Assembly: GCA_964247055.1 (NCBI GenBank)
Contig: OZ176058.1
Span: 3,534,001 to 3,598,000 of the forward strand
Direction: 5' to 3'
From: Paragordius varius
Lineage: Eukaryota; Animalia; Nematomorpha
Length of the DNA: 64,000 nt
Shown piece by piece: positions 9,561 through 53,304 of the stretch (position 1 is the first letter of the stretch; the number at the start of each line of letters is the position of its first letter). The position numbers and the translations under genes are program-made. The notes below the pieces were generated by a model. The model saw only the letters and a list, made by a program, of their open reading frames with translations. It was not told the origin of the DNA and made no database searches.

Positions 9561-12046
9561 ATTAACTACGCTGTGTCATTCATTCGCTCATTCAATACAA
9601 CCAAAATATTAAAAATTATAAATCAAACAATTTATTACAAATTGCCAAATGTAAAGTGAAAAAAAAGTGTAGCATAATAAATGAAACAAATTATAAAATA
9701 TTATAGGGAAATGTATAAGTACAAAGGTATGAGTGTAAAAGAATTATTGCACCAAGCAATTCGCTCTGCTTCTCACGTTTGAAAATATAAAAATTACTTT
9801 TCGAATATACCATCATATTGGCTTGATTCAAATTCCAAAATTACATCTCAAATAAAAACGAAATTATTATTTGTAAGAATTTTTTGACGGAGATAATTTT
9901 CAAAATCATCCACTGTATCATGATTTTTCACAATGATAGTGTCTCATTTAGTTTTTCTTTTATCCAACATAAATAAATGTGGGGGAAGGATGTTTTTCCC
10001 TCAAAATCCTCATTTTTAATCCTTGAAACTATATACACATCTGCGTAAGCCACAGAATTCTTCTGGTTTTCCTGATCACACAGACTGTACGAAAGGAGAC
10101 CAGTTCTATCAACAACATCGCAGGCTCGCCATTCAGAACTTTGTTCGTTTTTCACCATTATGCGTTGGTATATTAAAACGCACGACGTGGACGGGGTGCG
10201 TCTAAGACTGTTGTTTTTGTGTTAATCCAGGTCAGGGTGTTTAGGAGACTCGTTTAAAGAGTAGTTGGAAGGGGGTTTCCTTTGTGGTAGCGGGAATAGA
10301 GTTACGGTAAGACCATAAAGTAGTATTAAAAGCTTCCTCCGGTGTATTAATATAATTTTTGATTTTCCTATACTTGCCCTTTAGGATCCCTACCAACCTT
10401 TCTACCATCCCATTACTTTTAGGATGATAGAGGGTTACCCTCACGTGCTTAATTCCCAAGTTTGTCAGGGTTGATGTAAAGTACGAATTATTGAAATAAG
10501 AAGCGTTATCACTTTCTACCGTCTTCGGAAACCCAAACCTGGCAAAGGTTTCCTCGAGTTTGTGAAATATATTTACCGAATTAACCCGTTTTAACATAAA
10601 CCCTTCCGACCATTTTGATGAGCTATCAATCAACAAAAACCAAAAATACCCGTCAACTGGTCCCGCTATATCGATGTGCAAACGCTCCCATATCGCAGCA
10701 TTTGGATCCCATTGCTAAGTGGGTTTTTTACTAGGCTTGGCTTGTTTCCTTGGCATGAGCTACATTGACTGTACCTTCTTACCAAATCGTTCTCTAATTT
10801 TGGTCAAAAACAGGTAAACCTTGCCATTACTTTCATCGTTTCTACATTATTATGCCCGCTGTGTAAATAATTGACCATATTCGCCTGTCTTTCCGGGATG
10901 ATTCGATCGTTCAAACTTAGCAATCCATATTGGTACAAAATTTCTCCTTTACGGTTGGTGAACTCAGCCAACTCAACATCACTCCAATCTTGATAATTAA
11001 TAGCCTTGATTACCTTTGGCAAAATTTTATCCTTAACTGTTTCTCTTCGGATCTCATCTCGACTTAAATGAACGTTATGACAATTTCGGAACCTAAGATG
11101 TCTCGTTACCATGTAGTCTCTATCAATTGTGTCAACATTATCTTCACCGGGACATTTTGACAAGTAATCGGCTCTATTTTTAGGACCCGCTTGATAACTT
11201 AATTCAAAATCATAATCAGTCAGTCGGTTAACCGATCTTAAAACTTTCGCATTCTGAATTTCTTTCAAATTTCTATCCCTATTTATTAACCTAACCAGTG
11301 GTAAGTGGTCTGTCAAAATTTCAAACTTTCTACCATAAACGAAGTTATGAAACTTTTCTAATGCAAAAACAATAGCCTTTAATTCCTTTTCTATCGTGGA
11401 GTAGTTCAATTCTGCGGTACTACCTTTTCTCGAACCATAGGCAATGGGTTTCCTTTCACCATTTACAACATGAGATAAAATATATCCAAACCCTATATCT
11501 GAGGCATTGGCTTCAATTACTGACTTTGTATCCGGATTGTATGGTGTTAAAAATATTTGTTCACTTAAAATTTCCTTTGCTGCTTTCCAACTTTTCACGT
11601 GTTTTTCCGACGAGTTCCATCTGACGTTCTTACTCGTTAAACTATGTACACTTACAATCAATTGAAGCTTGGGTATAAATCTTTCATGGAACGTTAAAAG
11701 TCATAAAAAACTTCTTAAAGATTTTTAATCCACAGATTTTTAAAATCATTGATTGCTTTTACTTTATTCTTGCATGAACTTATACCTTTAATACTTATTT
11801 CAAATCCCAGATAACTTACTGAAGGTTCACCAATTTTTATTTTATCTTTTCTTAATCTAAAACCTGCTAATTCTGCCCGATTTAAAACATTATTAAAATT
11901 TAATAAATGTTCCTGTTCAGATTTGCCAGTTGCTAAAACATCATCTAAATATAAGTTGAGTGGGTGACGACGAAGTGTTGTTAAATAAGATTCGTGTGTT
12001 AACGTCGTGTGAATAATGAAAGAAAATAAAAATAAATTTATTATAG

Positions 12047-12080
12047 ACTCAAATTTTCGCCCAATGGCATCATCAGGAGT
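12047..12080 (-). ncRNA. Minimal type I hammerhead ribozyme motif (mirror copy)
   Basis: Exact reverse complement of 12604..12637. Confidence 0.7.
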
Positions 12081-12603
12081 TGTTAAAAGAAAAAACTTAA
12101 AATAAAGTATAACCAAGAAAAAAATATAAAATGAAATTAAATGTGAGACAAATCAATGCTTATAAATTGATATAATAGACAAAGGAAAGTAACATAAAAG
12201 AAAACCGTTATAATCTTGAGCGCATGTGCAATATATTTTTTATAAGAACATAAATATATCTACATTAGACAAAACAAACAAATTATAAAAAATAAAAAAT
12301 TTAATTAATATCAATGCTGTCACAAACCAAAATTTTTATAAAAAACCATAATATTTTTATTCCAAAAACTTTATACAGCATTGATATTACTTAAATTTTT
12401 TATTTTTTATAATTTGTTTGTTTTGTCTAATGTAGATATATTTATGTTCTTATAAAAAATATATTGCACATGCGCTCAAGATTATAACGGTTTTCTTTCC
12501 TTTGTCTATTATATCAATTTATAAGCATTGATTTGTCTCACATTTCATTTCATTTTATATTTTTTTCTTGGTTATACTTTATTTTAAGTTTTTTCTTTTA
12601 ACA

Positions 12604-12637
12604 ACTCCTGATGATGCCATTGGGCGAAAATTTGAGT
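12604..12637 (+). ncRNA. Minimal type I hammerhead ribozyme motif
   Basis: actc-CTGATGA-t-gcc(attg)ggc-GAAA-a-t-T-T/gagt: stem I actc/gagt, stem II gcc/ggc, loopless stem III, predicted cleavage after 12633 (UUU triplet). Confidence 0.7.
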
Positions 12638-15600
12638 CTATAATAAATTTATTTTTATTTTCTTTCATTATTCACACGACGTTAACACACGAATCATCTA
12701 AATATGCACAAGTGCCGGGACAACCTTTTATAACATGGTCCATGACCCGTTGGAATATTATTGGTGCTGTTGACAGTCCGAAAGACATCAGCGGTAAAAT
12801 TCCTTGTGAGTTGCAATTGTTAGAAGGTGTTGTTCTTTAGTTATGGGTATTTGTAGATAGGCATATTTCAGATCAATCTTACTGAAAACTTCTTCGCCAA
12901 TCTTACTTACTAAATCATCAAACGTTGGAATGATATGAGAATCCTCAGTCAGCCACTTGTTGATCGTAACTCTATCGCTACAAATTCTTACCTCTCCATT
13001 CGCTTTGAGCACATTGACGGTGGGCGTGCCCCATGTCAGAGGTGTAAGGTTGGGATCTATTGGCCCCAAAATGTCTAACTTTTGTAATCTTAGCAATTCG
13101 TTTTCAACTTTTGCTCTTAGGGGAAACGGTACTCGGCGACAAGGCCAAACTTTGGGTGATGCATTGGGTGCTATATGAATTGTAACTGGCTCAATAGCCT
13201 AATTCCTCTTTAAATAGATTAGGAAAATTTTCAATAATTTTATCAAGTTTAAGAAAATTAATTCTTACCTTAGGAATGTCAATGTTGAATCTTGTGATCT
13301 AATCTAAGCCACAAATGAGCGGTGCCTTTGACATTATTTCTTTCACACAACATTCTGCGTCCCCAAGTTTTGCCCATTGATTTTCCCAGTAGAAGTACTT
13401 TACTATCATTTGGCTTTTACTGGCGGTATGGGTCTAATATTTGGCCTGCCAACTTGTTTCCAGGTGTCAAAGCTGATAACACTGATGTCAGCTCCAGTGT
13501 CATAGATAATTTGTTCTGTGTTGTTTATCATTATTCTTATGGTCCACGGTGAGGTTGGCATTGCTTTTCTATGGATCTGGCGGTTGAACAAATTTTTGGC
13601 AGTGTTTTTTGATCTACACATTTTTGCGAAGTGGTGAGGTTTTCCACATTTATTGCAATTACGGTTCCAGGCAGGACATTTGAATGGTCTATGGCTACTC
13701 CACAACGATTGCATGTTATGGGTTTTGCTGCTGGCTGTCGTGAACGCATGGCCTTATTAATATTATTATTGGTGTTTTGTAATCGATTTAAGATATTATC
13801 CTTGTCATAACTGGTGTAGTCTCATTATGTTATGAAAGCCACCCTAGCAGCCTCGTGTGCTAATGCGAGATACACTATCGTTTCTAGAGGCACGGATTGT
13901 CCGTTGATTCGGCATCTTGAATGTATATCGATTTCCAATTGCGGTTGCCGTAAACCAATGACGAAAGCATCCCGAATACGTTCCTCAATCGAATCATTGA
14001 ATTTGGCCTCTTCGGCTGCGATCTTAACCCGTTCTAGAAATTGGGTGAACGATTCAGTGTTGCTCCGCACAAGTCGAAAAAATTCAAATCTGGTTTGAAA
14101 TTTTGATTTTGTGGTAAATAATTTTAGGCCTGTTGTCATTATCTCGCTCCATGACATCTTTTATTTTTTTGGGATACAGTCGTTGATTTATTTTTTGCAC
14201 AACCAATAGACCACCATGGGCAAGTAAGGTTGTTTTGAGAGCTTGTTCTGTTACAGGGATCTTTCGCCTCCATAACATTTATCATATAATCAACGTATTC
14301 CTCAAACTTAATATTATATTTCTCGATGCATAAGTTAGCGAGATTGGCAAATGGCGTTGTCATGTTCGTACGGATATCGGTAAGATCTTCACTAGCAGCT
14401 TAGTTTGGAATTCGAATTGCCACCAGATGTTAGATAGAACAAAGGTATAAAACGTAAAACTTAAAATGATATATATTCGTCTTATATACTCTTTTTAGGT
14501 TAACATAATTTGCATTATAACCATATGATTTCGTGGAACAAAGGATATAATTTACATAGTACAAAAAATATAAAAATACGACAATTCAAACAGAAAATAT
14601 AATATACAAACAAAATATATATTTAAAATTTGCATGTAATACAAAAAAAAGTCTTACAAATATTAAGCCGATATTAAAAATATGCTATTTATAGTCTTTT
14701 AGGCGCATTATAGATAAAAAATTTATAAAATTAAAAAAATTCTCAACTCAAACTTTTTGCCGCCATTTTTATTTAATTAATTTTATTAAATCACTAAATC
14801 TATATTATGGTAGAAAATGTAAATAATTAATTTTAAAAAGGTTTTAGGCTACAATCTTTATATATGTTATTCTAATATCAGCTACATCAATTGTGTTTTG
14901 GTGCTGCCCCAAGTTTAGATAGAAGTCACATAACTTTTAAAAATATAAGCTTTTTTATAATTGACAACAATGTTTGATACTTTAATCACTAATATAACTT
15001 TTAATATAGTATTTTGTTAACAAAATTAAGCTCTTAATACCCCAAGCAAGAGGTAAAGTAGGACAAGGTAAAAAGGTATGAACATTAACTATTAACATAT
15101 TAAAGAGATGTATATTAAATTGAAAAAAAAATATTTTTTGGAACCAAATAACAAGTGTATTGTTTTTAATATTATTGGATAAAAGACTTTTTGTTTGAGC
15201 ACTGAGAATATTAATAATTATATAATCACATTATGCACATTTTTATGTTGGCCTAATTCGCAATACAGCGGTTGATATAGGTAAAAACAGCAAATGGTTA
15301 AATTAACCAATATTTCCCTATCTAACATGATTATATTTTTTTTTCATTATGGAACAAAATGTTTATACCTTACGCTACAATATAACCAATCAGCTAACAA
15401 TAATATAAATCACCAATATAATTGTGACACTGTATTATATATATATAAATATATATTAGTTCGCTATGATTCAAATTCAATGATAAATAATGCTCAAATC
15501 CTTTTTTGGACGTCATTTATTGGGAAATATATAAATAAATTAAATAACAGTAAAAATCTTTCACCTATGATTAATTTAGTCAATTTATAGTTTCCTTAGC

Positions 15601-17327: not shown

Positions 17328-17563
17328 GCATAGACTAACGATAGGCTATATCAGTATTTTAAACGGCTAAAAGTGTAAATAATTAACATGTCTGTTGCCA
17401 CGTAGGAGATTTTTCATTTTTTATTACATAGTAAATTTAACATTGTATTTCTACTTGTAAAATCTAACTAATAGTAATGAAACATCTAATACAAGGCTAC
17501 TGATATGTATGTATATTATAAAATCCCTTAAAGTCATTTAAATTACAGATATGGTCAATAATA

Positions 17564-17565
<2 letters not shown>

Positions 17566-17629
<64 letters not shown>
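17566..17629. repeat. (TA)n microsatellite (others at ~1789, 20819, 22237, 27167, 33801, 48792)
   Basis: Direct reading. Confidence 0.95.
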
Positions 17630-17642
17630 CATAAAAAATAAG

Positions 17643-20600
17643 ATACAGGAATGAAATTTATTGGCGGAGCAACGGTCAACATTTATTGGAAAAATTGGAA
17701 TGATTGGAAAGAAGAGTCAAACTCAATACCAAAGTGTCAGATTCAACAATTTATTAAGGGCGACTGGGTAAACCTTGACCAAAGTTTTAATTGCACCTCA
17801 TCAGGAAACAAAACTGTTGATAAACTAACATATGTTTATGAACAAATGCACCTTCGAATTCATTTTATGGAAATGAACAAATCTTTGGTTATAGATACCA
17901 GAGGTTAGAATGTCCTTTAGAGTAGAATTAGTATACGTTTCTAATAATTAATTATTACCAGAGAGCATATTCAGCAAAGATGATTCATTTATGACTTATA
18001 GTTATTTATTAACTCTTTACAATTATTGCCCAATATAAATTCTCTCCGCTGTAAGTGTTATCTAGAAATATTTTATTATACTTACTCACACTGTAAAATT
18101 AGTATATGGAATCTAAAAACCTTTATTTTTTAATATAACTTATCACACATTTTAACTTTAAAGTAATTAATCATACGTAAATATACAGTATATATAAGGT
18201 GACCAGACGTCCCGCTTTAAAAATCGCTCATTTTGTAAGTTGATGCCGCCATATCTATTTTTTATGTTTCTGTGTTTCCATATGCTTTGTAATATCATGC
18301 TTGCCGCCATGTGCTAGGGTAAATTATCCCTCGCATATAAGACATTTAACAAATGATTCATTTTTCGTTTTTTTTGATAAAAGGAAAATCTTTCATTAAT
18401 TCGTCGTTGTTACAACCTCTTTTTGTGCTCATATTTATAAACTACTATTAATTAGTATAATAAATATTATATTACCTTAATTTTCTGGAATAAACGTGTA
18501 AGGTACCGATTTGTAGTATCAATTTGTCTTTAAAGCTACCGATTTGTGGTATTAATTTGGCTTTTTGATATGTTAGCAAGTAATAAAACTAAAATATTAG
18601 CATAAATATTATATTACCTTAATTTTCTGAAATAAACGTGTAAACTACCGATTTGTGGTATTAATTTGTCTTTTAATCTAAAGATTTGTGGTATTAACTT
18701 GGCCTTTTGATAATGATGACAGTCGTAGTAGGAAGCAAAGTGTATAATCATATGAATTTGAAAAAAATAAATATTTAATGATAAAAAATTTAAGCGGATA
18801 AAAAATTTATTTGTATTAAAAAAAATTTTTTTTATATAATCGTGAAAAAGCGGGACATTTTAAAAACGTAGCGGGACGCGGGACAAAGTGTGAAAAAGCG
18901 GGACGTCTGGTCACCTTATGTATGGAACATAATTTGTTTAAAAATGATTATTTTAACCATTTCTATCCTACGTATTTTTTTCTGTTGTCCATAATATAAG
19001 TTTTCATTCAATATATTTATTTAATAATGAGACTTCATAAAAAAGTGTCATTGTGCACCGTCTTGTTTTACAAATAATCGTTTCTGTTTGTATAAAACAT
19101 TTTTATATTCTGGCTATTCATTGAGCCTTGTTTTTCTGGATGCTTTATTATATTGCGATTAGGTAATGATATAAAATTATTTTCTAACCTTTTTTGACTT
19201 GGATTTTGACCTTTGTCCTGTGATAAAAAATGATTCTAGGAAATCATATTTTTATAAATATTTCAATGGCTGGCAAAAGAGCTAACCAACATTTCTACAA
19301 TATCCAAGCATTAACATCTATATTTTCCACAACCAGTGGTAATAAATCAGTAGCTGTTTGAATAGCGTTTCGTCTTTATTATTTTTTTCCAGAATATTAC
19401 ATTCACTTTACCCTTTGTTCGTGCACATGTAAATTTATTTAATAAGGTACAAACAACCTGTAAGGTACAAATTTTTTTATATTTATAATGTATGTGTGGT
19501 AAAAATAAATAAATATTACAATGAAAATGATCCCCCCCTCTCAGATTTGTCCCGCTTTTTCCTTCAAAAAATCTGGTCACCTTAAGTATATAGTGAAATC
19601 ATACGGCAACATAAAATTATAAAAAATCATACTTTTTTGCAAGCCTTTAGTTTTCTTATATAATATTTATTTACTATAAAATATATAATATCTTCAGCTA
19701 TTTATCTTTTTTTCATACTTAGCCAATTTATACAATGATAAATAGAAAAACAAGATTTAAAAAGTAGGATTGTCTTTTAGAAATAAATATTTGTTTTTAT
19801 ATTTTTACGTTTTGTCCGTATAATTTCAATCATAACTGTAATTTATAAGAATTATTATAATACATGGATTGCTCTAGTGTTTAACTACAATAAATTTTTA
19901 TAACCAACTGTTATGTAGTATCTAGTAATTTTAATGTAATTTTAACATATCAATATTTGAATAGGAAATTTAGAGTTGAAATCATGAAAAGAATTATTTA
20001 CACTTTAATTGTATTATTTGCCAATAATTATCTTGTTGACTAAATAAAGCTGATCCAGTCAGACCTGTTAATATTTATTTGAGCTTAAAATTGAATTTGT
20101 GCGGAGAAAATGTAATTATAAAGACAAATATTTTTTTCTTAAAAAGCAACAACACACTCTTAAAACCTGTTTTTTTAATATAATCCTTCTTCTAAACTGC
20201 TCAGTATAAAATATGGATGTAAATTGGTAACACAATCAATTAATATATTACGATATAATTTAACGTTTATGACCATTATTGCTTTTTTGGGTAGTTTTAT
20301 TCCCCAGAGTCATTTAAAATGAATATTTTAAAAAGTATTTATGGTATCAAGCATTTTTTAATTTTTAGGCGCAATATGCAAAAAATATTTTAACATCTAA
20401 AATCGTAAAAAAATTTGTTCATGAACCTTTTTTATAGTCATGTTTTTATATAATTTTTTTAGTCCCTAATGCAACACACAATATAATGTTTATTATGGTG
20501 TTTATAACTTGAAAAAATTTCAGGCTACATTTTATTAGCAAAAAATTGAATATATTTTGATTTTATTACTCATTTCAATCGTTTTTGGTAACGTCTTAAT

Positions 20601-22042
20601 TTTGTACTCTAGAACTCACAACTTTATAATATAAGCCTTTTAATCTAATGTGAAGAATGCTTGATAAATATTTAACTCCTTAACTCTATACCTTATTTAG
20701 ATAAGCTCTATAAAACTACCCCAAAATAAACTAGGGCAATAAAGTGAACAGGTAAAGAAATATTTGTCTTTAAATTTTTACGTTTTGTCCGTATATAACA
20801 GTAAAAAGATTATTCAATCTATATATATATATATATATATATATCTTAATTATGGAAAGGAATTAGCGCCTACAAAAATAGACAGAAACAATTAATAGTG
20901 TATTGGGATATCCCAAATTCCGACTATGTTAAATTCTCATTAACTGACGCATGCGGTTCAAATCACGAATTAAAAGATTATGAAAGTAGAAGTTGGGGAC
21001 GCAAAATATTTGATTGGTTTAATTGTTCAAGAAGACAATTAACACTTAAAACTGCCGAGGCAAATGATGATCAATATACATTTGAATATACTGGTATACT
21101 ATAATTTATTTCAATTAATTTTTATTTGAATTAATTAAAATTTATGAGTAAATCTTTAAGGTTATCTTACTAAAGTAATTGGGGAATTTCATGTTCCTTC
21201 TTTAAAAATTTTAATAATTTATAAATGTGCTAGAGCAATCGAATTATATATTATATATTTATATATAAATGCAGTATAAGTATCAGACTAAATAACTATT
21301 AATTTAACAAGTTATATTTTATGAAACAATATTAGTATAAAGAAAGGAAATATAATAAATTAATGTTCTAAGGCTTAGTTTTAGGATACACATATTTCTT
21401 GAACCTGTCGGTTATATGTATCGAAAGGAATGTAAATTAATTATTTTTGTAATTAACACTCAATGTGTGGATAGTTTATATACCAGAAAGATTTGAATAA
21501 CAAAAACATTTTTAATATCAGGCTATATACCTTTTTTAATATATTTCAAAAATATTAAATTGAAAATATTATTTAAATATTTTACTGCAAAACTTGATAT
21601 TAAATTCATTTTAAATTTGAATCGTGTTTATGCGTCCGAAATTCGGTATCTGGAGGTAGGTCACATAATTGTAAAAATTTTTTACAGGAGAAATATGTTT
21701 AATAATAGAAATTAATTAAAATACTACAAGATTGAGCACTGGCATACAAAATTTTCCCAGTATGGCCGGACTAAAAAGTGAAAATATCATAAGGTTTTAT
21801 CATTATAAATACGGGAAAACGGTAAAACACAAAATCATTTATATAAAAAGAACCACTTTTGTGTTAGAGACGATATAAATTAGTAATACACTTTTGATAT
21901 TGCATTTCTAATTAATCAAAGTATGTTAAGATATTGAATTTAATTTTTTTTAACAAATATTGTCATTTGTCCAGATACAACTAGTGAAACGACCGAAACA
22001 CCTCTAGAAATACCCAATCTGGACGATTTTTCCAGCAAATAA
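17643..22042 (+). CDS. Unrecognised gene, last three exons (17643 or 17649..17903, 20899..21093, 21975..22042); two Cys/Trp-patterned, possibly Fn3-like modules and a Thr/Ser/Glu tail
   Basis: All junctions are phase 1 with AG/GT ends and splice to an open frame: ..MKFIGGATVNIYWKNW..IDTR|VYWDIPNSDY..TFEYT|DTTSETTETPLEIPNLDDFSSK*. Open in both copies. 5' exons not identified. Confidence 0.7.
18195..18918 (-). mobile_element. Internal-deletion derivative of the hAT at 62355 (copy B 49388..50118)
   Basis: TIR taaggtgaccagacgtcccgcttt at both ends; contains the 5' ~750 bp of the 62355 element, including the BED finger VKCLICEG.FTLAHGGKHDITKHMETQKH, fused directly to a ~24-bp terminal repeat. Confidence 0.85.
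18919..19584 (-). mobile_element. Second decayed hAT of the TAAGGTGACC family (copy B 50119..50876)
   Basis: End atctggtcacctta at 19584; minus-strand remnants CTLQVVCTLLNKFTCARTK and MLGYCR..LALLPAIE align to the 62912 transposase. Copy B keeps an extra ~95 bp (50567-50661). Confidence 0.75.
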
Positions 22043-23330: not shown

Positions 23331-25110
23331 TAATTAGTAATATTCTCATGCTCAAACAAGAAGTTATCCAAAAATAATAAAAACAATACACTTGTTTTTT
23401 ATTCCAAAAAATATTTTTTTTTCAATTTAACATACATCTCTTATTATGTTTATAATTAATATTCAATACCATTTAACCTTTTTGTCCTACTTTACCTTTT
23501 GGGGTACTTTTAAGAGATCAATGTTGTTAATAACTACGATATTGAAAGTTATATTATTATAAATTATATTATCAAACATTGTTGTCAATTGTAAAAAAGC
23601 TTCAATTTCTAAAAGTTTTGTGACTTCCAGAGTTTTAACTCGGGGCCGCTCCTAACCACGATTGAAACAAACAAATAAATATATAAGTTATGTAGACTCA
23701 AACCTTTTTAAAATTAATTATTTACATTTTTACCTTAATATACATTTATTTGCTTGTTGCATTAGCGATTGAAAAAAATTAATGGAATAAAAATGGCGGC
23801 AAAAAGTTTGAGATGAGAATTTTATTAATTTTATAATTTTTTTTATCTATACTGCGACTAATTCGGCTTAATATTTGTAAGACTTTTGTTGAGTATTACA
23901 TGCAAATTTTAAATAGATATTTTGTTTGGATATTATAATTTTCTTTGAATTGTCTTATTTTTATATTTTTTGTACTATGCAAATATGATATACTTTGTTA
24001 CACGAAATTTTATTGTTATAATGCAAATTATGTTAACCTAAAAAAAATAGTATATATAAAGCACAAAAACCCGAATAAATATCCTTTAAGTTTTACGTTT
24101 TATACCATTGTAACCTTCTAACATGGTGGCAATTCAAATTCCGAACTAATCTAGAGAAAGTGGAGGTCTTACCGATATCCGAACGAACATGACAACGCCA
24201 ATTGCCAATCTCGCTAACCTATGCATCAAGATATATATTGTTAATACCAAGTTTGAGGAATACGTTGATTATATAAAAAATGCTATGGAAGCGGAAGATA
24301 TTCCTGTAACAGAACACATTGCTTGCCTATGGTGGTCTATTGGTTGTGCGAAAAATAAATTAACGACTCTGTCCCAAAATAAAAGATGCATCATGGAGCG
24401 AGATACAGGCCTAAAAGTACTTAATTACACAAAATCAAAATTTCAAAGCAGATTTGAAATTTTTTGACTTGTGCGGAGCAACGCTGAATCTTTCACCCAA
24501 TTTTTAGAACGGGTTAAGATCGCAGCCAAAGAGGCCAAATTCAATGATTCGGTTGAACGTATTCGGGATGCTTCCGTCATTGGTTTACGGCAACCGCAAT
24601 TGGAAATTGTATACATTCAAGGTATCCCGATGCCGAGATCAACGGACAACCCGTGCCTCTAGAAACGATAGTGGATCTCGCACTAGCACACGAGGCTGCT
24701 AGGGTGGCCTTCATAACAATAATGAGAATACACCAATTATGACAATGATAGTTTCTTAGATCGATTACAAAACACCAATAATAATATTAATAAGGCCATG
24801 CGTTCACCACAGCCATAGACCATACAAATGTCCTGCCTGGAACCGTAATTGCAATAAATGTGGAAAACCTCACCACTTCGCAAAAATGTGTAGATCAAAA
24901 AACACTGCCAAAAATTTGTTCAACCGCCAGATCTATAGAAAAGCAATGCCAACCTCACCGTGGACCGTAAGAATAATGATAACACAGAACAAACGTTTAT
25001 CTATGACACTGGAGCTGACATCAGTATTATCAGCTTTGACACCTGGAAACAAGTTGGCAAGCCAATTATAAGACCCATACCGCCAGTAAAAGCCTAATGA
25101 TAGTATAGTA
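23331..25110 (+). mobile_element. Third Gypsy copy: 5' flank/LTR, PBS and gag-protease fragment
   Basis: Inverted homolog of 13420..15210; aacaTGGTGGCAATT at ~24121; ORFs 24189, 24471 and 24886 match gag. Confidence 0.9.
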
Positions 25111-26915
25111 CAGTGGTACTCACCAAAAAAATTTGACGGGCCAAATAAAACATATTTTTTTTTCCAGGGCCATGAACCTTATAATTGCAATGTTCCACTA
25201 TTTGACACATACGCATATATTTATACTCTAAATCAGCACAATGAATTTTTTGCGGGTCGCATGTAAATCAAGTTATAAACTCGTTTTGCACCATTTAGTT
25301 TTAAAAATTAAAATATTTTGATAACAACATTTATTTTGATATTAACCAATAATTTTTGACAAATTTGGTTTCCCCTCATGACAAGCCAATCTTAATACGT
25401 CATCCATATGATCATTGGTTAAGCGATTTCTGTATGTATTCTTGATATACTTTATTTTTGAATAGGCCCTCTCACACGTGTAAGTTGATGGAAAAACAGT
25501 TAATAACTTGAGCACATTTTTTATATTTTCTTATTTATTTGGCACATATTGCCAAAACTCTACATATATTTCTTCTCTGCGATTTTCCTTAAATATAGCT
25601 CACAAATTGAAATCATTAAAATCAACTAATTCTTCAAAAAGCGCCTCATCAAAACCGAAAAGCTCATGCTTAATGTTGGATATATCCATATGCCATGGAT
25701 TTTCAACGAGTTTTAAGCAATTTTTAATATTTTTTAATTCTTGAAATCTTCATCTCATTAGATAAAAATGTTAAATGATTGTATATTATTAAATTAATCT
25801 CCGCGGTCCATATTTTCTTTAATCGTTTTAAGTGTTGGAAAAGTAGGAGTGTTTTATATATAAAATCTTGTTATATATATTTTTTTTTTTAAAAAGCAAA
25901 TATATGATTAGCAAATTGGGTATTATTTTGCTCCCTTGAAGACTTGTATTAAAAGTACTAAGTTTATAAATAATGTCGCAAAGGTAGGATGATAAAACCC
26001 ACCATTTGTCACTATTATTTCCTCGTCAAACTTTCTGTTATCTTTTATAAATAATAGAATTTCATGTCTTATAACAAAATATCTATTTAATACTTTGCTA
26101 AGGCTTAGCCATCTCACAGCGGTGTACAAAAGAATATCATCAAACTCACTGTGGATATCTTTCTGAAGGTTTTTGATACGGCGGTTAAATTCTTTGCCAC
26201 GGATGTGGAAAGCCATGGAGATAATAGATTTTTTCTTTCTGGCATAATTCCTTAATCTTTTTATATTTTTCGTTTCTTACCTCATGATTTTCTGTTAATT
26301 TATGAGAATAATGAATTGTAAAATGTATTTCAATATTGTTTTTTTTATAATTATGTTGTCCCTACATATAAGGCAGGTAAACATTTTTATTTAAAACGAC
26401 AAAGAATTTTTCTTCCCATTCTTTTTTAAAGGAACGATTTTCATCGGATTATTTACGTTTTTAGCATTAGATGTCATTTTAATTAATGTTTAAATATTAT
26501 GTAAATGGAATATAATTTGAATTAGGCTATAATGTTGATTGAAAAATATTTTATGGGAATGAGTTATTAAAAATGATGTAGGATAGCAATGAAAATGTAT
26601 ATTCAAGTTTGGGTTCTTGCTTAAATACAAAAAAGAAATGCATTAAAAATAACAAAATAGAAAAGAAAATAGAATACAGAAACAATGTGTGCCAAAATTT
26701 TGAAATCATTTTAATGTAGGGAAATTTTTCTACATTTCCAATTGGCTAAAAAATAAAACTACCAAAATAAAGAAAATGAATTATTAAAATAAGCGAAAAT
26801 TTGTTTATGTTTATGTATATTTTAAAAATTCATCGATAAAAAAAATAATTTAAGTATCAACATGGTCATAGGGCAATTTTAAAGCACTCTTAGGTCCGCG
26901 GTTTGAGTACCACTG
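25111..26915 (-). mobile_element. Buster/Charlie-type hAT, internally deleted (1.8 kb)
   Basis: Perfect 12-bp TIR cagtggtactca/tgagtaccactg; ORF 25923..26216 LLYTAVRWLSLSKVLNRYFVIRHEI; dimerisation domain FPSTYTCERAYSKIKYIKNTYRNRLTNDHMDDVLRLA at ~25385-25510. Confidence 0.92.
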
Positions 26916-27161
26916 ATATAATTATTAACCTCTTTCGAAACAAAGGGTAATAATGTTTACAACAAACAAATATAAGATTATTTTCAATATTGTCAACTTT
27001 ATATCAAGTATAGTAATGATCGTGCTTAAATGTGACACCCAAAAGGTTTATGGGTGTGTTGCTCCTTAAATTTACCCTTATTATGTTTGAATTTTGGACA
27101 ATTCCGTGAGTTTGACATTACGTTGAGAAATTTTCGAATTTTTTAGCATTTAAAGAAATTA

Positions 27162-27203
<42 letters not shown>

Positions 27204-27213
27204 ATTGTGTTAG

Positions 27214-27431
27214 ATGTGAAAAGCTATCCAAACCTCAATGGGAAAAATGTTAGAGTGGATGGAAAAAGCTACACAATTTCAAGTGTTAAAAATGGTATAG
27301 CCATTGGAAACGGACTAATTATAGGAAAGACAAATTCAACATACTTGTTTGTAGTTTGTGATGTGGCAAGCATAAACGAAGTATCCCCACTTGTTGAAAC
27401 CACCATTGCGAAACTAAATGGAATCAAATAA
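27214..27431 (+). CDS. Divergent profilin-like protein, C-terminal exon
   Basis: VRVDGKSYTI..IAIGNGLIIGKTNSTYLFVVCD...VSPLVETTIAKL parallels the profilin pattern (G.kY...iyG..G+++.KT..++++.y....vVE.+a.yL); acceptor tgttag at 27213 (phase 1). 5' exon unresolved. Confidence 0.6.
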
Positions 27432-48834: not shown

Positions 48835-51800
48835 ATACCGGAATGAAATTTATTGGCGGAGCAACGGTCAACATTTATTGGAAAAATTGGAATGATTGGA
48901 AAGAAGAGTCAAACTCAATACCAAAGTGTCAGATTCAACAATTTATTAAGGGCGACTGGGTAAACCTTGACCAAAGTTTTAATTGCACCTCATCAGGAAA
49001 CAAAACTGTTGATAAACTAACATATGTTTATAAACAAATGCACCTTCGAATTCATTTTATGGAAATGAACAAATCTTTGGTTATAGATACCAGAGGTTAG
49101 AATGTCCTTTAGAGTAGAATTAGTATACGTTTCTAATAATTAATTATTACCAGAGAGCATATTCAGCAAAGATGATTCATTTATGACTTATAGTTATTTA
49201 TTAACTCTTTACAATTATTACCCAATATAAATTCTCTCCGCTGTAAGTGTTATCTAGAAATATTTTATTATACTTACTCACACTGTAAAATTAGTATCTG
49301 GAATCTAAAAACCTTTATTTTTTAATATAACTTATCACACATTTTAACTTTAAAGTAATTAATCATACGTAAATATACAGTATATATCACCAGACGTCCC
49401 GCTTTAAAAATCGCTCATTTTGTAAGATGATGCCGCCATAACTAAACATTTTTTATGTTTCTGTGTTTCCATACATATGCTTTGTAATATCATGCTTGCC
49501 GCCATGTGCTAGGGTAAATTATCCCTCGCATATAAGACATTTAACAGATGATTCATTCTTCGTTTTTTTTGATAAAAGGAAAATCTTTCATTAATTCGTC
49601 GTTGAATTTACAACCTCTTTTTGTGCTCATATTCATAAACTACTATTAATTAGTATAATAAATATTATATTACCTTAATTTTCTGGAATAAACGTGTAAG
49701 GTACCGATTTGTAGTATCAATTTGTCTTTAAAGCTACCGATTTGTGGTATTAATTTGGCTTTTTGATATGTTAGCAAGTAATAAAACTAAAATATTAGCA
49801 TAAATATTATATTACCTTAATTTTCTGAAATAAACGTGTAAACTACCGATTTGTGGTATTAATTTGTCTTTTAATCTAGAGATTTGTGGTATTAACTTGG
49901 CCTTTTAATAATGATTACAGTCGTAGTAGGAAGCAAAGTGTATAATCATATGAATTTGAAAAAAATAAATATTTAATGATAAAAAATTTAAGCGGATAAA
50001 AAAAATTTATTTGTATTAAAAAAAATTTTTTTTATATAATCGTGAAAAAGCGGGACATTTTAAAAACGTAGCGGGACGCGGGACAAAGTGTGAAAAAGCG
50101 GGACGTCTGGTCACCTTATGTATGGAACATAATTTGTTTAAAAATGATTATTTTAACCATTTCTATCCTACGTATTTTTTTCCGTTGTCCATAATATAAG
50201 TTTTCATTCAATATATTTATTTAATAATGAGACTTCATAAAAAAGTCTCATTGTGCACCGTCTTGTTTTACAAATAATCGTTTCTGTTTGTATAAAACAT
50301 TTTTATATTCTGGCTATTCATTGAGCCTTGTTTTTCTGGATGCTTTATTATATTGCGATTAGGTAATGATATAAAATTATTTTCTAACCTTTTTTGACTT
50401 GGATTTTGACCTTTGTCCTGTGATAAAAAATGATTCTAGGAGATCATATTTTTATAAATATTTCAATGGCTGGCAAAAGAGCTAACCAACATTTCTACAA
50501 TATCCAAGCATTAACATCTATATTTTCCACATCCAGTGGTAATAAATCAGTAGCTGTTTGAATAGCGTGTATCTGCTAATGTTTTGATTAAGATTATTCG
50601 CTAAATTGTTAAAAATATTTTTGTACCGCTTCTTGCATCACCCAGCGCACTTTGTGATGATTTCGTCTTTATTATTTTTTTCCAGAATATTACAATCACT
50701 TTACCCTTTGTTCGTGCACATGTAAATTTATTTAATAAGGTACAAACAACCTGTAAGGTACAAATTTTTTTATATTTATAATGTATGTGTGGTAAAAATA
50801 AATAAATATTACAATAAAAATGACCCCCCCTCTCAGATTTGTCCCGCTTTTTCCTTCAAAAAATCTGGTCACCTTAAGTATATAGTGAAATCATACGGCA
50901 ACATAAAATTATAAAAAATCATACTTTTTTGCAAGCCTTTAGTTTTCTTATATAATATTTATTTACTATTAAATATATAATTGCTTCAGCTATTTATCTT
51001 TTTTTCATACTTAGCCAATTTATACAATGATAAATAGAAAAACAAGATTTAAAAAGTAGGATCGTCTTTTAGAAATAAATATTTGTTTTTATATTTTTAC
51101 GTTTTGTCCGTATAATTTCAATCATAACTGTAATTTATAAGAATTATTATAATACATGGATTGCTCTAGTGTTTAACTACAATAAATTTTTATAACCAAC
51201 TGTTATGTAGTATCTAGTAATTATAATGTAATTTTAACATATCAATATTTGCATAGGAAATTTAGAGTTGAAATCATGAAAAGAATTATTTACACTTTAA
51301 TTGTATTATTTGCCAATAATTATCTTGTTGACTAAATAAAGCTGATCCAGTCAGACCTGTCAATATTATTTAAGCTTAAAATTGAATTGTGCGGAGAAAA
51401 TGGAATTATAAAGACAAATATTTTTTCTTAAAAAGCAACAACACACTCTTAAAACTTGTTTTTTTAATATAACCCTTCTTCTAAACTGCTCAGATATAAA
51501 ATATGGATGTAAATTGGTAACACAATCAATTAATATATTACGATATAATTTAACGTTTATGACCATTATTGCTTTTTTGGGTAGTTTTATACCCCAGAGT
51601 CATTTAAAATGAATATTTTAAAAAGTATTTTAATTTTTAGGTGCAATATGCAAAAAATATTTTGACATCTAAAATTGTAAAAAAATTTGTTCTTGAACCT
51701 TTTTTTATAGTCATGTTTTTATATAATTTTTTTAGTCCCTAATGCAACACACATAATGTTTATTATGGTTAAAAAAGTTATTAACTTAAAATTTCAGGCT

Positions 51801-53304
51801 ACATTTTATTAGCAAAAATATATTTTGATTTTTCATTTCAATCGTTTTTGGTAATGTCTTAATTTGAACTCTAGAACTCACAAAATTTTATAATATAAGC
51901 CTTTTAATCTAATGTGAAGAATGCTTGATAAATATTTAACTCCTTAACTCTATACCTTATTTAGATAAGCTCTATAAAACTACCCCAAAATAAACTAGGG
52001 CAATAAAGTGAACAGGTAAAGAAATATTTGTCTTTAAATTTTTACGTTTTGTCCGTATATAACAGTAAAAAGATTATTCAATCTATATATATATATATCT
52101 TAATTATGGAAAGGAATTAGCGCCTACAAAAATAGACAGAAACAATTAATAGTGTATTGGGATATCCCAGATTCGGACGATTTTGATTTCTTATTAACTG
52201 ACTCATGCGGTTCAAATCACGAATTAAAAAAATGTGAAAGTAGAAGTTGGGGACGCAAAATTTTTAATAACTTTGAATGTTCCAACAGACAATTAACACT
52301 TAAAACTGCCGAGGCAAATGATAATCAATATACATTTGAATATACTGGTATACTATAATTTATTTCAATTAATTTTTATTTGAATTAATTAAAATTTATG
52401 AGTAAATCTTTAAGGTTATCTTACTAAAGTTATTGGGGAATTTCATGTTCCTTCCTTAAAATTTTAATTTATAAGATATGTGCTAGAGCAATCGAATTAT
52501 ATATAATATATTTATATATAAATGCAGTATAAGTATCAGACTAAATAACTATTAAAATTTTACAAGTTAAATAGATATTTTATGAAACAGTATTAGTATA
52601 AAGAAAGGAAATATAATAAAATAATGTTATAAGGCTTAGTTGTAGGCTATACATATTGCTTGGACCTGTCGGTTATATGCATCAATAGGAATGTAAATTA
52701 ATTTTTTTGTAATTAACACTCAATGTGTGGATAGTTTATATACCAGAAAGATTTGAATAACAAAAACATTTTTAATATCAGGCTATATACCTTTTTTAAT
52801 ATATTTCAAAAATATTAAATTGAAAATATTATTTAAATATTTTACTGCAAAACTTGATATTAAATTCATTTTAAATTTGAATCGTGTTTAGGCGTCCGAA
52901 ATTCGGTATCTGGAGGTAGGTCACATAATTGTAAAAATTTTTTACAGGAGAAATATGTTTAATAATAGAAATTAATTAAAATACTACAAGATTGAGCACT
53001 GGCATACAAAATTTTCCCAGTATAGCCGGACTAAAAAGTGAAAATGTCATAAGGTCTTATATCATTTTAAATACGGGAATATGGTAAAACACAAAATCAT
53101 TTATATAAAAAGAACCACTTTTGTGTTAGAGACGATATAAATTAGTAATACACTTTTGATATTGCATTTCTAATTAATCAAAGTATGTTAAGAAATTGAA
53201 TTTAATTTTTTTTAACAAATATTGTCATTTGTCCAGATACAACTAGTGAAACGACCGAAACACCTCTAGAAATACCCAATCTGGACGATTTTTCCAGCAA
53301 ATAA
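48835..53304 (+). CDS. Paralog in copy B (exons 48835..49095, 52153..52347, 53237..53304)
   Basis: Same splice sites, except the inner acceptor cag is ccg (the outer aag is retained in frame); 14 amino-acid differences, 13 of them in the middle exon. Confidence 0.7.

What the first reader, a model, noticed from the sequence alone, without database searches (positions are those of the whole stretch)
20899..21093. One exon is hypervariable between otherwise near-identical paralogs
Versus 52153..52347, I count 22 differences in 195 nt, changing 13 residues, with only 3 silent codon changes and several multi-base swaps (tgg/aac, aaa/gat, gat/aaa, aat/gaa, aga/aac). The preceding exon differs at 1 of 253 nt, the last exon at 0 of 68, and the immediate intron flanks are nearly identical. 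No stop or indel arose. This suggests diversifying selection on one domain, or patchwork conversion from a more distant family member, as in host-interacting surface or secreted proteins. Copy B also loses the N-C-S sequon and gains a Cys.
Basis: partly seen in the sequence, partly recalled or inferred. Interest (0 to 1): 0.8.

Follow-up and report, generated by a model that had tools for sequence, protein, structure and literature searches.

The report
Variable exon in tandem orphan gene
Two neighbouring copies of a small unannotated three-exon gene are almost identical except for three short patches inside one exon; this looks like an ordinary footprint of gene conversion among tandem copies, and selection for diversity is possible but not shown.

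Summary
Exon 2 (20899-21093 vs 52153-52347) differs at 22 of 195 nt with no indel. The introns differ at 1.3% (Fisher p = 1.7e-12).

The window holds copies A and B of a four-copy tandem array. Copies C and D lie just 3' of it, and there are no other copies in the 110-Mb assembly. With C/D as reference, 7 changes are private to A and 15 to B. Nineteen of the 22 fall in three patches of 18, 5 and 25 nt. C/D matches B in patch 1 and A in patches 2-3, so the exon is a mosaic.

dN/dS is 1.4 and cannot be told from neutral (p = 0.42). Silent sites are also about 7 times more diverged than the introns. Other blocks of the locus have conflicting genealogies.

My best reading (about 0.55) is older exon variants sitting in flanks homogenised by gene conversion. 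Diversifying selection may help keep them but is not demonstrated.

The reading frame is kept: exon indels are all in frame and no stop has arisen. The protein has no relatives, no family, no signal peptide and no confident fold, so the "secreted, host-interacting" idea has no support.

The scan reported the same pattern on other DNA of this genome (s1-363580). This is a new member of a known kind.

The parts
17651..17903 (+). Copy A, exon 1 (ATG start, 84 codons + 1 base; donor GT at 17904)
   Evidence: Open frame and splice phase. Four copies in the genome. Differs from B at one base, 17840. C/D carry an in-frame 3-nt insertion.
20899..21093 (+). Copy A, exon 2, the variable exon (2 bases + 64 codons + 1 base; AG at 20897-98, GT at 21094-95)
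   Evidence: Only one frame is open. The splice sites are identical in all four copies. 22 differences from B.
20921..20938 (+). Patch 1: six changes private to copy A in 18 nt (residues 8-13; DFDFL in B/C/D vs YVKFS in A, plus one silent change)
   Evidence: Site patterns A|BCD. This 21-mer occurs nowhere else in the assembly with up to 2 mismatches.
20976..20980 (+). Patch 2: three changes private to copy B in 5 nt (DY -> KC)
   Evidence: Site patterns ACD|B; protein alignment.
21008..21032 (+). Patch 3: ten B-private changes and one A-private change in 25 nt (DWFNCS(K/R) -> NNFECSN, with two silent changes); includes the lost N-C-S sequon
   Evidence: B's 26-mer occurs nowhere else in the assembly with up to 3 mismatches.
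21975..22042 (+). Copy A, probable exon 3 (68 nt, ends in TAA)
   Evidence: The phase fits and the acceptor is good. Identical in A, B and C. D has two in-frame 9-nt insertions with the stop kept.
48843..49095 (+). Copy B, exon 1
52153..52347 (+). Copy B, exon 2 (15 private changes)
53237..53304 (+). Copy B, probable exon 3

Best explanation
The window holds copies A and B of a four-copy tandem array (C and D lie 4.5-28 kb beyond the window's 3' end). The gene is a small, lineage-restricted, three-exon gene of about 171 codons. Repeated gene conversion or unequal crossing-over between the copies has homogenised most of the gene region. Three short patches inside exon 2 have kept, or received, older and strongly different variants. 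A carries one variant of patch 1. B carries the other variants of patches 2 and 3. C/D is a recombinant of the two. The result is paralogous proteins with one shared scaffold that differ by 13 mostly radical, charge-changing residues in three patches.

Shown: the local excess, its tract structure, the mosaic with C/D, the discordant genealogies of neighbouring blocks, the intact reading frames and the absence of any other copy.

Inferred: that the patches are older than their flanks rather than newly evolved, and that they persist because selection favours different copies and/or because dense mismatches stop conversion tracts.
For: (1) Relative to C/D, 7 exon-2 changes are private to A and 15 to B, and only 1 separates A+B from C+D. 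C/D equals B in patch 1 and A in patches 2-3.

(2) 19 of the 22 changes sit in three patches of 18, 5 and 25 nt (permutation p = 4e-4), and five codons carry 2-3 changes each.

(3) All 3 silent changes lie inside or beside the patches. Silent divergence is 0.092 against 0.013 in the introns: 0.45 silent changes expected, 3 seen, Poisson p about 0.011 (my arithmetic). So the exon looks older, not merely selected.

(4) The locus is demonstrably a patchwork. Blocks that separate A+B from C+D (17754-18122, 20187-20477, 21100-21163) alternate with blocks identical in all four copies. D has a 1.1-kb 3' block only 82-83% identical to A/B/C, although C and D are otherwise about 99% alike.

(5) A-B substitution divergence elsewhere in the 31-kb units reaches 10-14%. 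Exon 2's 11.3% matches these old blocks.

(6) The gene is real enough to matter. The three exon indels are 3, 9 and 9 nt, whereas only 14 of 50 intron indels are multiples of three. About 40 exon substitutions made no stop (p about 0.02, derived from the 9.3% stop fraction).
Against: There is no outgroup, so the 'private' states cannot be polarised. The same data fit recent change in A and in B. No donor for either private tract exists in the assembly. The silent-site excess rests on three changes that adjoin non-synonymous ones and could come from multi-nucleotide mutation events. It is unexplained, without selection or mismatch-blocked conversion, why both A's and B's tracts fall inside the same 195-nt exon of a 4.4-kb gene. 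Splicing and expression are unverified.
Confidence: 0.55

Rival explanations
1. Accelerated evolution in place. After the A/B region was last homogenised, positive (diversifying) selection drove 6 amino-acid substitutions in A and 13 in B at a few surface patches of exon 2.
For: Non-synonymous changes outnumber silent ones 19 to 3, and dN/dS is 1.4-1.5 in every pairwise comparison. The replacements are radical and charge-changing, and they lose a sequon and gain a Cys. No donor sequence exists anywhere in the assembly. Both lineages changed the same exon and no other. Exons 1 and 3 also change mostly non-synonymously.
Against: The 19:3 ratio is what random mutation gives in this AT-rich frame (82% non-synonymous expected; p = 0.42). 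Measured against the intron rate it would require dN about 12 times neutral in B, plus a 7-fold excess of silent changes, which selection does not explain. Triple and double hits within single codons at 1.3% background divergence are hard to reach by stepwise substitution.
Confidence: 0.22
2. Neutral mutational clusters. A few multi-nucleotide or template-switch mutation events happened to hit a weakly constrained exon, with no selection involved.
For: Changes are tightly clustered. dN/dS cannot be told from 1. An indel-associated private cluster also occurs in intron 2 at 21216-21224.
Against: At least three or four separate clusters in two lineages all fall in one 195-nt exon, with none of similar size and without indels in 3.3 kb of intron. 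No direct or inverted template was found on either strand of the whole assembly. The frame stays open (about 12% by chance for 22 hits).
Confidence: 0.12
3. Assembly or consensus artefact. The patches are polishing errors or a chimera of haplotypes, or A and B are two haplotypes wrongly placed in tandem.
For: No reads could be examined. The array is a complex nested duplication that is hard to assemble.
Against: The differences are 22 substitutions without any indel, they respect the codon frame, and they are absent from every other copy, so they cannot be cross-mapped reads from A-D. Units A and B differ by many transposon-sized indels and by blocks of up to 14% divergence, unlike a simple haplotig duplication. 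Even under this rival the variants would be real allelic sequence.
Confidence: 0.06

Closest known systems
Segment switching in exons of snake three-finger toxin genes (ASSET; Doley et al. 2008, PMC2474615)
   Same: Members of a three-exon multigene family have highly similar introns, while short segments inside exons are replaced by distinctly different sequence of similar length. Here, patches of 18, 5 and 25 nt are 33-60% different within otherwise identical exon and intron sequence.
   Different: No toxin fold, signal peptide, gland expression or any homologue is known here. Only four copies exist. The mosaic with C/D points to shuffling of existing variants, which the ASSET papers left open.
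Conotoxin genes: hypervariable mature-peptide exon with conserved introns and signal exon (Wu et al. 2013, PMC3862624)
   Same: Substitution rates differ greatly between exons of one gene. One exon collects point changes and in-frame (trinucleotide) indels while the introns stay conserved.
   Different: Conotoxins show significant positive selection across many species and are secreted prepropeptides. Here dN/dS is not significantly above 1, no leader peptide was found, and there is no comparative depth.
Concerted evolution of tandem paralogs with unconverted islands (MHC-type mosaic gene conversion; established population-genetic knowledge, not tested against a specific paper here)
   Same: Flanks are homogenised, short old variant tracts are retained or exchanged, and genealogies are discordant along the locus.
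   Different: No functional evidence says that the variable patches bind anything. There are no population data.
Earlier scan finding s1-363580 (same genome, another contig)
   Same: Two near-identical gene copies differ only in a patch around one exon that looks older than its surroundings.
   Different: A different gene: my exon searches found only the four copies on this contig. That patch was ~0.4 kb and extended around the exon, whereas here the differences stay inside the exon.

Membership tests
Fast-evolving tandem gene family with exon divergence above intron divergence (venom/effector-type 'accelerated evolution') | Coding exon more diverged between paralogs than the adjoining introns | tested here: met
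   Exon 2: 11.3% vs 1.33% in the introns, p = 1.7e-12. Not true for exon 1 (0.4%) or exon 3 (0%) between A and B.
Fast-evolving tandem gene family with exon divergence above intron divergence (venom/effector-type 'accelerated evolution') | dN/dS significantly above 1 | tested here: inconclusive
   dN/dS is 1.42 (19 non-synonymous, 3 silent). The probability of at least 19 of 22 under the intron mutation spectrum is 0.42. Four sequences are too few for site models.
Fast-evolving tandem gene family with exon divergence above intron divergence (venom/effector-type 'accelerated evolution') | Secreted product (signal peptide) | tested here: not met
   The modelled N-terminus is not hydrophobic. No ATG-started hydrophobic exon with a phase-1 donor lies in the 3 kb upstream. 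Exons joined by ultra-short introns were not modelled.
Interlocus gene-conversion mosaic | Discordant genealogies in adjacent blocks of the aligned copies | tested here: met
   AB|CD blocks, all-identical blocks, an ABC|D block of 1.1 kb, and A-private and B-private tracts.
Interlocus gene-conversion mosaic | An identifiable donor for each converted tract | tested here: not met
   Only four copies by protein and DNA search. The private 21-mer and 26-mer are unique in 110 Mb, on both strands. No donor is needed if the flanks, not the patches, were converted.
Interlocus gene-conversion mosaic | Silent sites in the tract as diverged as replacement sites | tested here: met
   dS 0.092 vs dN 0.132 in the exon, against 0.013 in the introns. 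This rests on 3 silent changes.
PAN/Apple domain proteins (best hit of the exhaustive search) | Significant match to the PAN profile and its conserved cysteine pattern | tested here: not met
   Pfam finds nothing in either exon even at E = 10. The hit (E = 1.9e-4) sums five weak 29-residue stretches of a five-repeat protein. The exons have 2 Cys each.
Diversity-generating retroelement-type targeted mutagenesis | Differences confined to adenines of a template copy | tested here: not met
   The 22 differences include all substitution classes. Adenine is on the A side at 8 sites and on the B side at 8.

The most novel reading that the evidence does not exclude
The four-copy array encodes a lineage-specific, cysteine-paired beta-rich protein of a parasitic worm. 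Its exon 2 carries three recognition loops that are kept different between copies by diversifying selection and reshuffled by very short conversion tracts. That would make it a small combinatorial variable-surface system of the ASSET or MHC-microconversion type in a phylum where none is described.
Probability: 0.12. Interest if true: 0.55.

Novelty: new member of a known kind. Interest (0 to 1): 0.3.

Why it matters
If the patches are functional loops kept diverse, this would be a compact natural example of an identical scaffold with swapped patches, in an unstudied animal lineage. It would also be a handle on which proteins of this probable parasite evolve fastest. As it stands, it mainly shows that tandem arrays in this genome evolve as conversion mosaics, a pattern the scan has now met twice. 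It also shows that unannotated orphan genes with kilobase introns exist there.

Tried and rejected
- Pfam on both exons at E up to 10: nothing.
- Word-index protein search with B's 111-aa open frame, so that proteins of up to 194 aa were eligible: nothing.
- Exhaustive HMMER search of 1.84 billion representatives with exon 1: two marginal hits inflated by repeats (PAN repeats, choline-binding repeats). I judged both spurious.
- ESM Atlas: no usable hit.
- Exact-product look-up for other assemblies: none.
- AlphaFold2 on single exons: exon 2 pLDDT 57, unusable for mapping the sites. Exon 1 pLDDT 66, all-beta. Foldseek against PDB gave only generic beta-sandwich rows at E of 0.07 or worse.
- Internal repeat between exons 1 and 2: not supported (BLASTP E = 3.2).
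- Signal-peptide exon upstream: none found.
- Template-switch or micro-donor search: a 9-mer scan was uninformative noise in this AT-rich DNA. The whole-genome 21- and 26-mer searches with mismatches were clean negatives.
- DGR-like adenine mutagenesis: rejected from the substitution spectrum.
- All protein work was done exon by exon, by reference.
- I did not verify the organism. Earlier notes call it a horsehair-worm relative.

Full report
**The observation**

The two stretches were read and aligned. A 20899-21093 and B 52153-52347 differ at 22 of 195 positions without any indel. The 64 full codons differ at 13 residues. Nei-Gojobori counting gives 3 silent and 19 replacement differences.

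No A/B substitution occurs in the 293 nt upstream (20623-20915) or in the 107 nt from the last variable site to 21176. Exon 1 (17651-17903) differs at one base, and the 68-nt exon 3 (21975-22042) at none.

Against 44 A/B differences in 3305 ungapped intron columns (1.33%), the exon's 22 in 195 gives Fisher p = 1.7e-12.

**Setting**

The window is AT-rich (21-38% G+C). It is part of a 110-Mb, 44-contig assembly.

A self-comparison shows a ~31-kb segmental duplication. Fetching the neighbouring DNA shows two more copies of the same gene, C and D, 4.5-28 kb beyond the window's 3' end, in 17.5-kb units that are 98% alike.

Protein and DNA searches of the whole assembly find exactly four copies of exons 1 and 2, and no fragment elsewhere. 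The rest of each unit is mostly Gypsy-type and other transposon remains.

A-B substitution divergence varies by block from 1.2% to about 14%. So 'near-identical' describes the gene region only.

**Is it a gene?**

- The three open frames join with matching phases (1 | 2+1 | 2) at GT-AG sites that are identical in all copies.
- All three indels in exons are in frame: 3 nt in exon 1 of C/D, and two of 9 nt in exon 3 of D, with the stop codon kept. Only 14 of 50 intron indels are multiples of three.
- About 40 exon substitutions among the copies made no stop. From the 9.3% stop-creating fraction, the chance of that is about 0.02.

So the frame is under selection. Amino-acid replacements are not resisted: exon 1 between A/B and C/D, and exon 3 of D, also change almost only by replacements.

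The product has no relatives. Pfam was blank, the word search blank, and the exhaustive HMMER search gave only two repeat-inflated marginal hits that I reject. The Atlas was blank.

Single-exon folds are of low confidence: pLDDT 57 for exon 2 and 66 for exon 1, the latter all-beta. They have no significant structural neighbour.

No signal-peptide exon was found. The spliced protein itself was neither searched nor folded, so exons were handled separately.

**What the four-way comparison shows**

C and D are identical in exon 2. Of the 23 variable exon sites, 7 are private to A, 15 are private to B, and 1 separates A+B from C+D.

- Six of A's seven private changes lie in 18 nt (20921-20938).
- B's lie at 20976-20980 (3 changes) and 21008-21032 (10 changes), plus three singles.
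- The clustering is significant (p = 4e-4), and five codons carry two or three changes each.
- C/D equals B in patch 1 and A in patches 2 and 3.

So the exon is a mosaic. It can be described as two old variants (A-type and B-type) plus a recombinant (C/D).

The three silent changes all sit in or beside the patches. Silent divergence (0.092) is about seven times the intron value: 0.45 silent changes expected, 3 seen, p about 0.011 by my own Poisson arithmetic. That is what an older tract predicts, and what pure positive selection does not.

dN/dS is 1.4. With 82% of random hits expected to be replacements, 19 of 22 has p = 0.42. Positive selection is therefore not shown.

**The locus as a whole is a patchwork**

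Blocks where A+B differ from C+D by 4-12% (17754-18122, 20187-20477, 21100-21163) alternate with blocks identical in all four copies. From 21161 on, D alone is 17-18% different from A, B and C over 1.1 kb of intron 2 and exon 3, although C and D are otherwise about 99% alike.

The simplest history is an old duplication followed by repeated conversion. For example, C's 3' part was probably overwritten by the A/B type. Exon 2 lies exactly where a block homogenised across all four copies meets a block homogenised only within pairs.

Its 11.3% divergence equals that of the least-homogenised parts of the A/B units.

No donor for either private tract exists in the assembly, on either strand. None is needed if the flanks, rather than the patches, were the converted part.

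**Why the patches persist is inferred, not shown**

Selection against homogenising them, and the known tendency of dense mismatches to stop heteroduplex extension, are both plausible. The fact that A's and B's tracts both fall inside the same 195-nt exon of a 4.4-kb gene argues that something more than chance is at work.

**Rivals**

- Recent adaptive change in place (0.22) fits the absent donor and the radical replacements. It needs a replacement rate about 12 times the intron rate, and it leaves the silent excess unexplained.
- Neutral multi-nucleotide events (0.12) do not explain the repeated hits on one exon.
- An artefact (0.06) is unlikely for indel-free, frame-respecting substitutions that are absent from all other copies. 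No reads could be checked.

**Comparison with known systems**

The pattern matches two published cases. One is the segment-wise exon change with conserved introns described for snake three-finger toxin genes (PMC2474615). The other is the exon-specific hypervariability of conotoxin genes (PMC3862624). It also matches mosaic conversion in tandem immune-type families.

Membership in a toxin- or effector-like class is not supported: there is no leader peptide, no significant dN/dS and no homologue.

An earlier agent of this scan reported the same kind of 'old exon patch in young flanks' in a different gene on another contig (s1-363580). That is a lead that this may be a recurrent feature of the genome's tandem families. 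It is not independent proof.

Earlier notes also call the genome a horsehair-worm relative's. I did not test that.

**Verdict**

This is a real, statistically strong and neatly delimited feature. It is best read as a conversion mosaic that preserves old exon variants in an orphan tandem gene: a new member of a known kind, of modest interest until expression, population and structural data exist.

Noticed in passing
L011:6700-7800 (copy D; about 90.7-91.8 kb in extended window coordinates): Copy D has a private 1.1-kb block (intron 2 + exon 3) only 82-83% identical to A/B/C, although C and D are otherwise ~99% alike. D's exon 3 has two in-frame 9-nt insertions and keeps its stop. C's 3' part was probably overwritten by the A/B type.
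   Followed up: partly
window 17647 vs 48839: The AG three bases upstream of the exon-1 ATG (a possible acceptor for an unseen 5' exon) is CG in copy B only. A second AG six bases further up is kept in all four copies.
   Followed up: no
window 17558-17630 and 20826-20845: (TA)n microsatellites, length-variable among the four copies, lie directly upstream of exon 1 and 55 nt upstream of exon 2. They account for several of the intron indels.
   Followed up: no
window 11800-12900: Rfam finds no hammerhead or any other family here at E up to 1, and nothing in the whole window at gathering score. This does not support the neighbouring note (s1-326657) of two hammerhead ribozymes in a Penelope-like insertion.
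   Followed up: partly
window 27147-27428 (+): A 94-codon open frame with protein-like composition (29% G+C), downstream of the gene. It was not searched.
   Followed up: no
L014, about 1.8-4.2 kb upstream of the window start: A tandem array of diverged repeats (self-matches at offsets of roughly 130-1000 nt, 75-80% identity), probably a satellite.
   Followed up: no
window 9931-14400 (-), 24150-25068 (+), 25926-26276 (-): Open frames that look like degraded transposon genes: pol and gag pieces of an LTR retroelement, and a frame resembling a hAT-type transposase C-terminus. Judged by eye only. They make up much of each duplicated unit.
   Followed up: no
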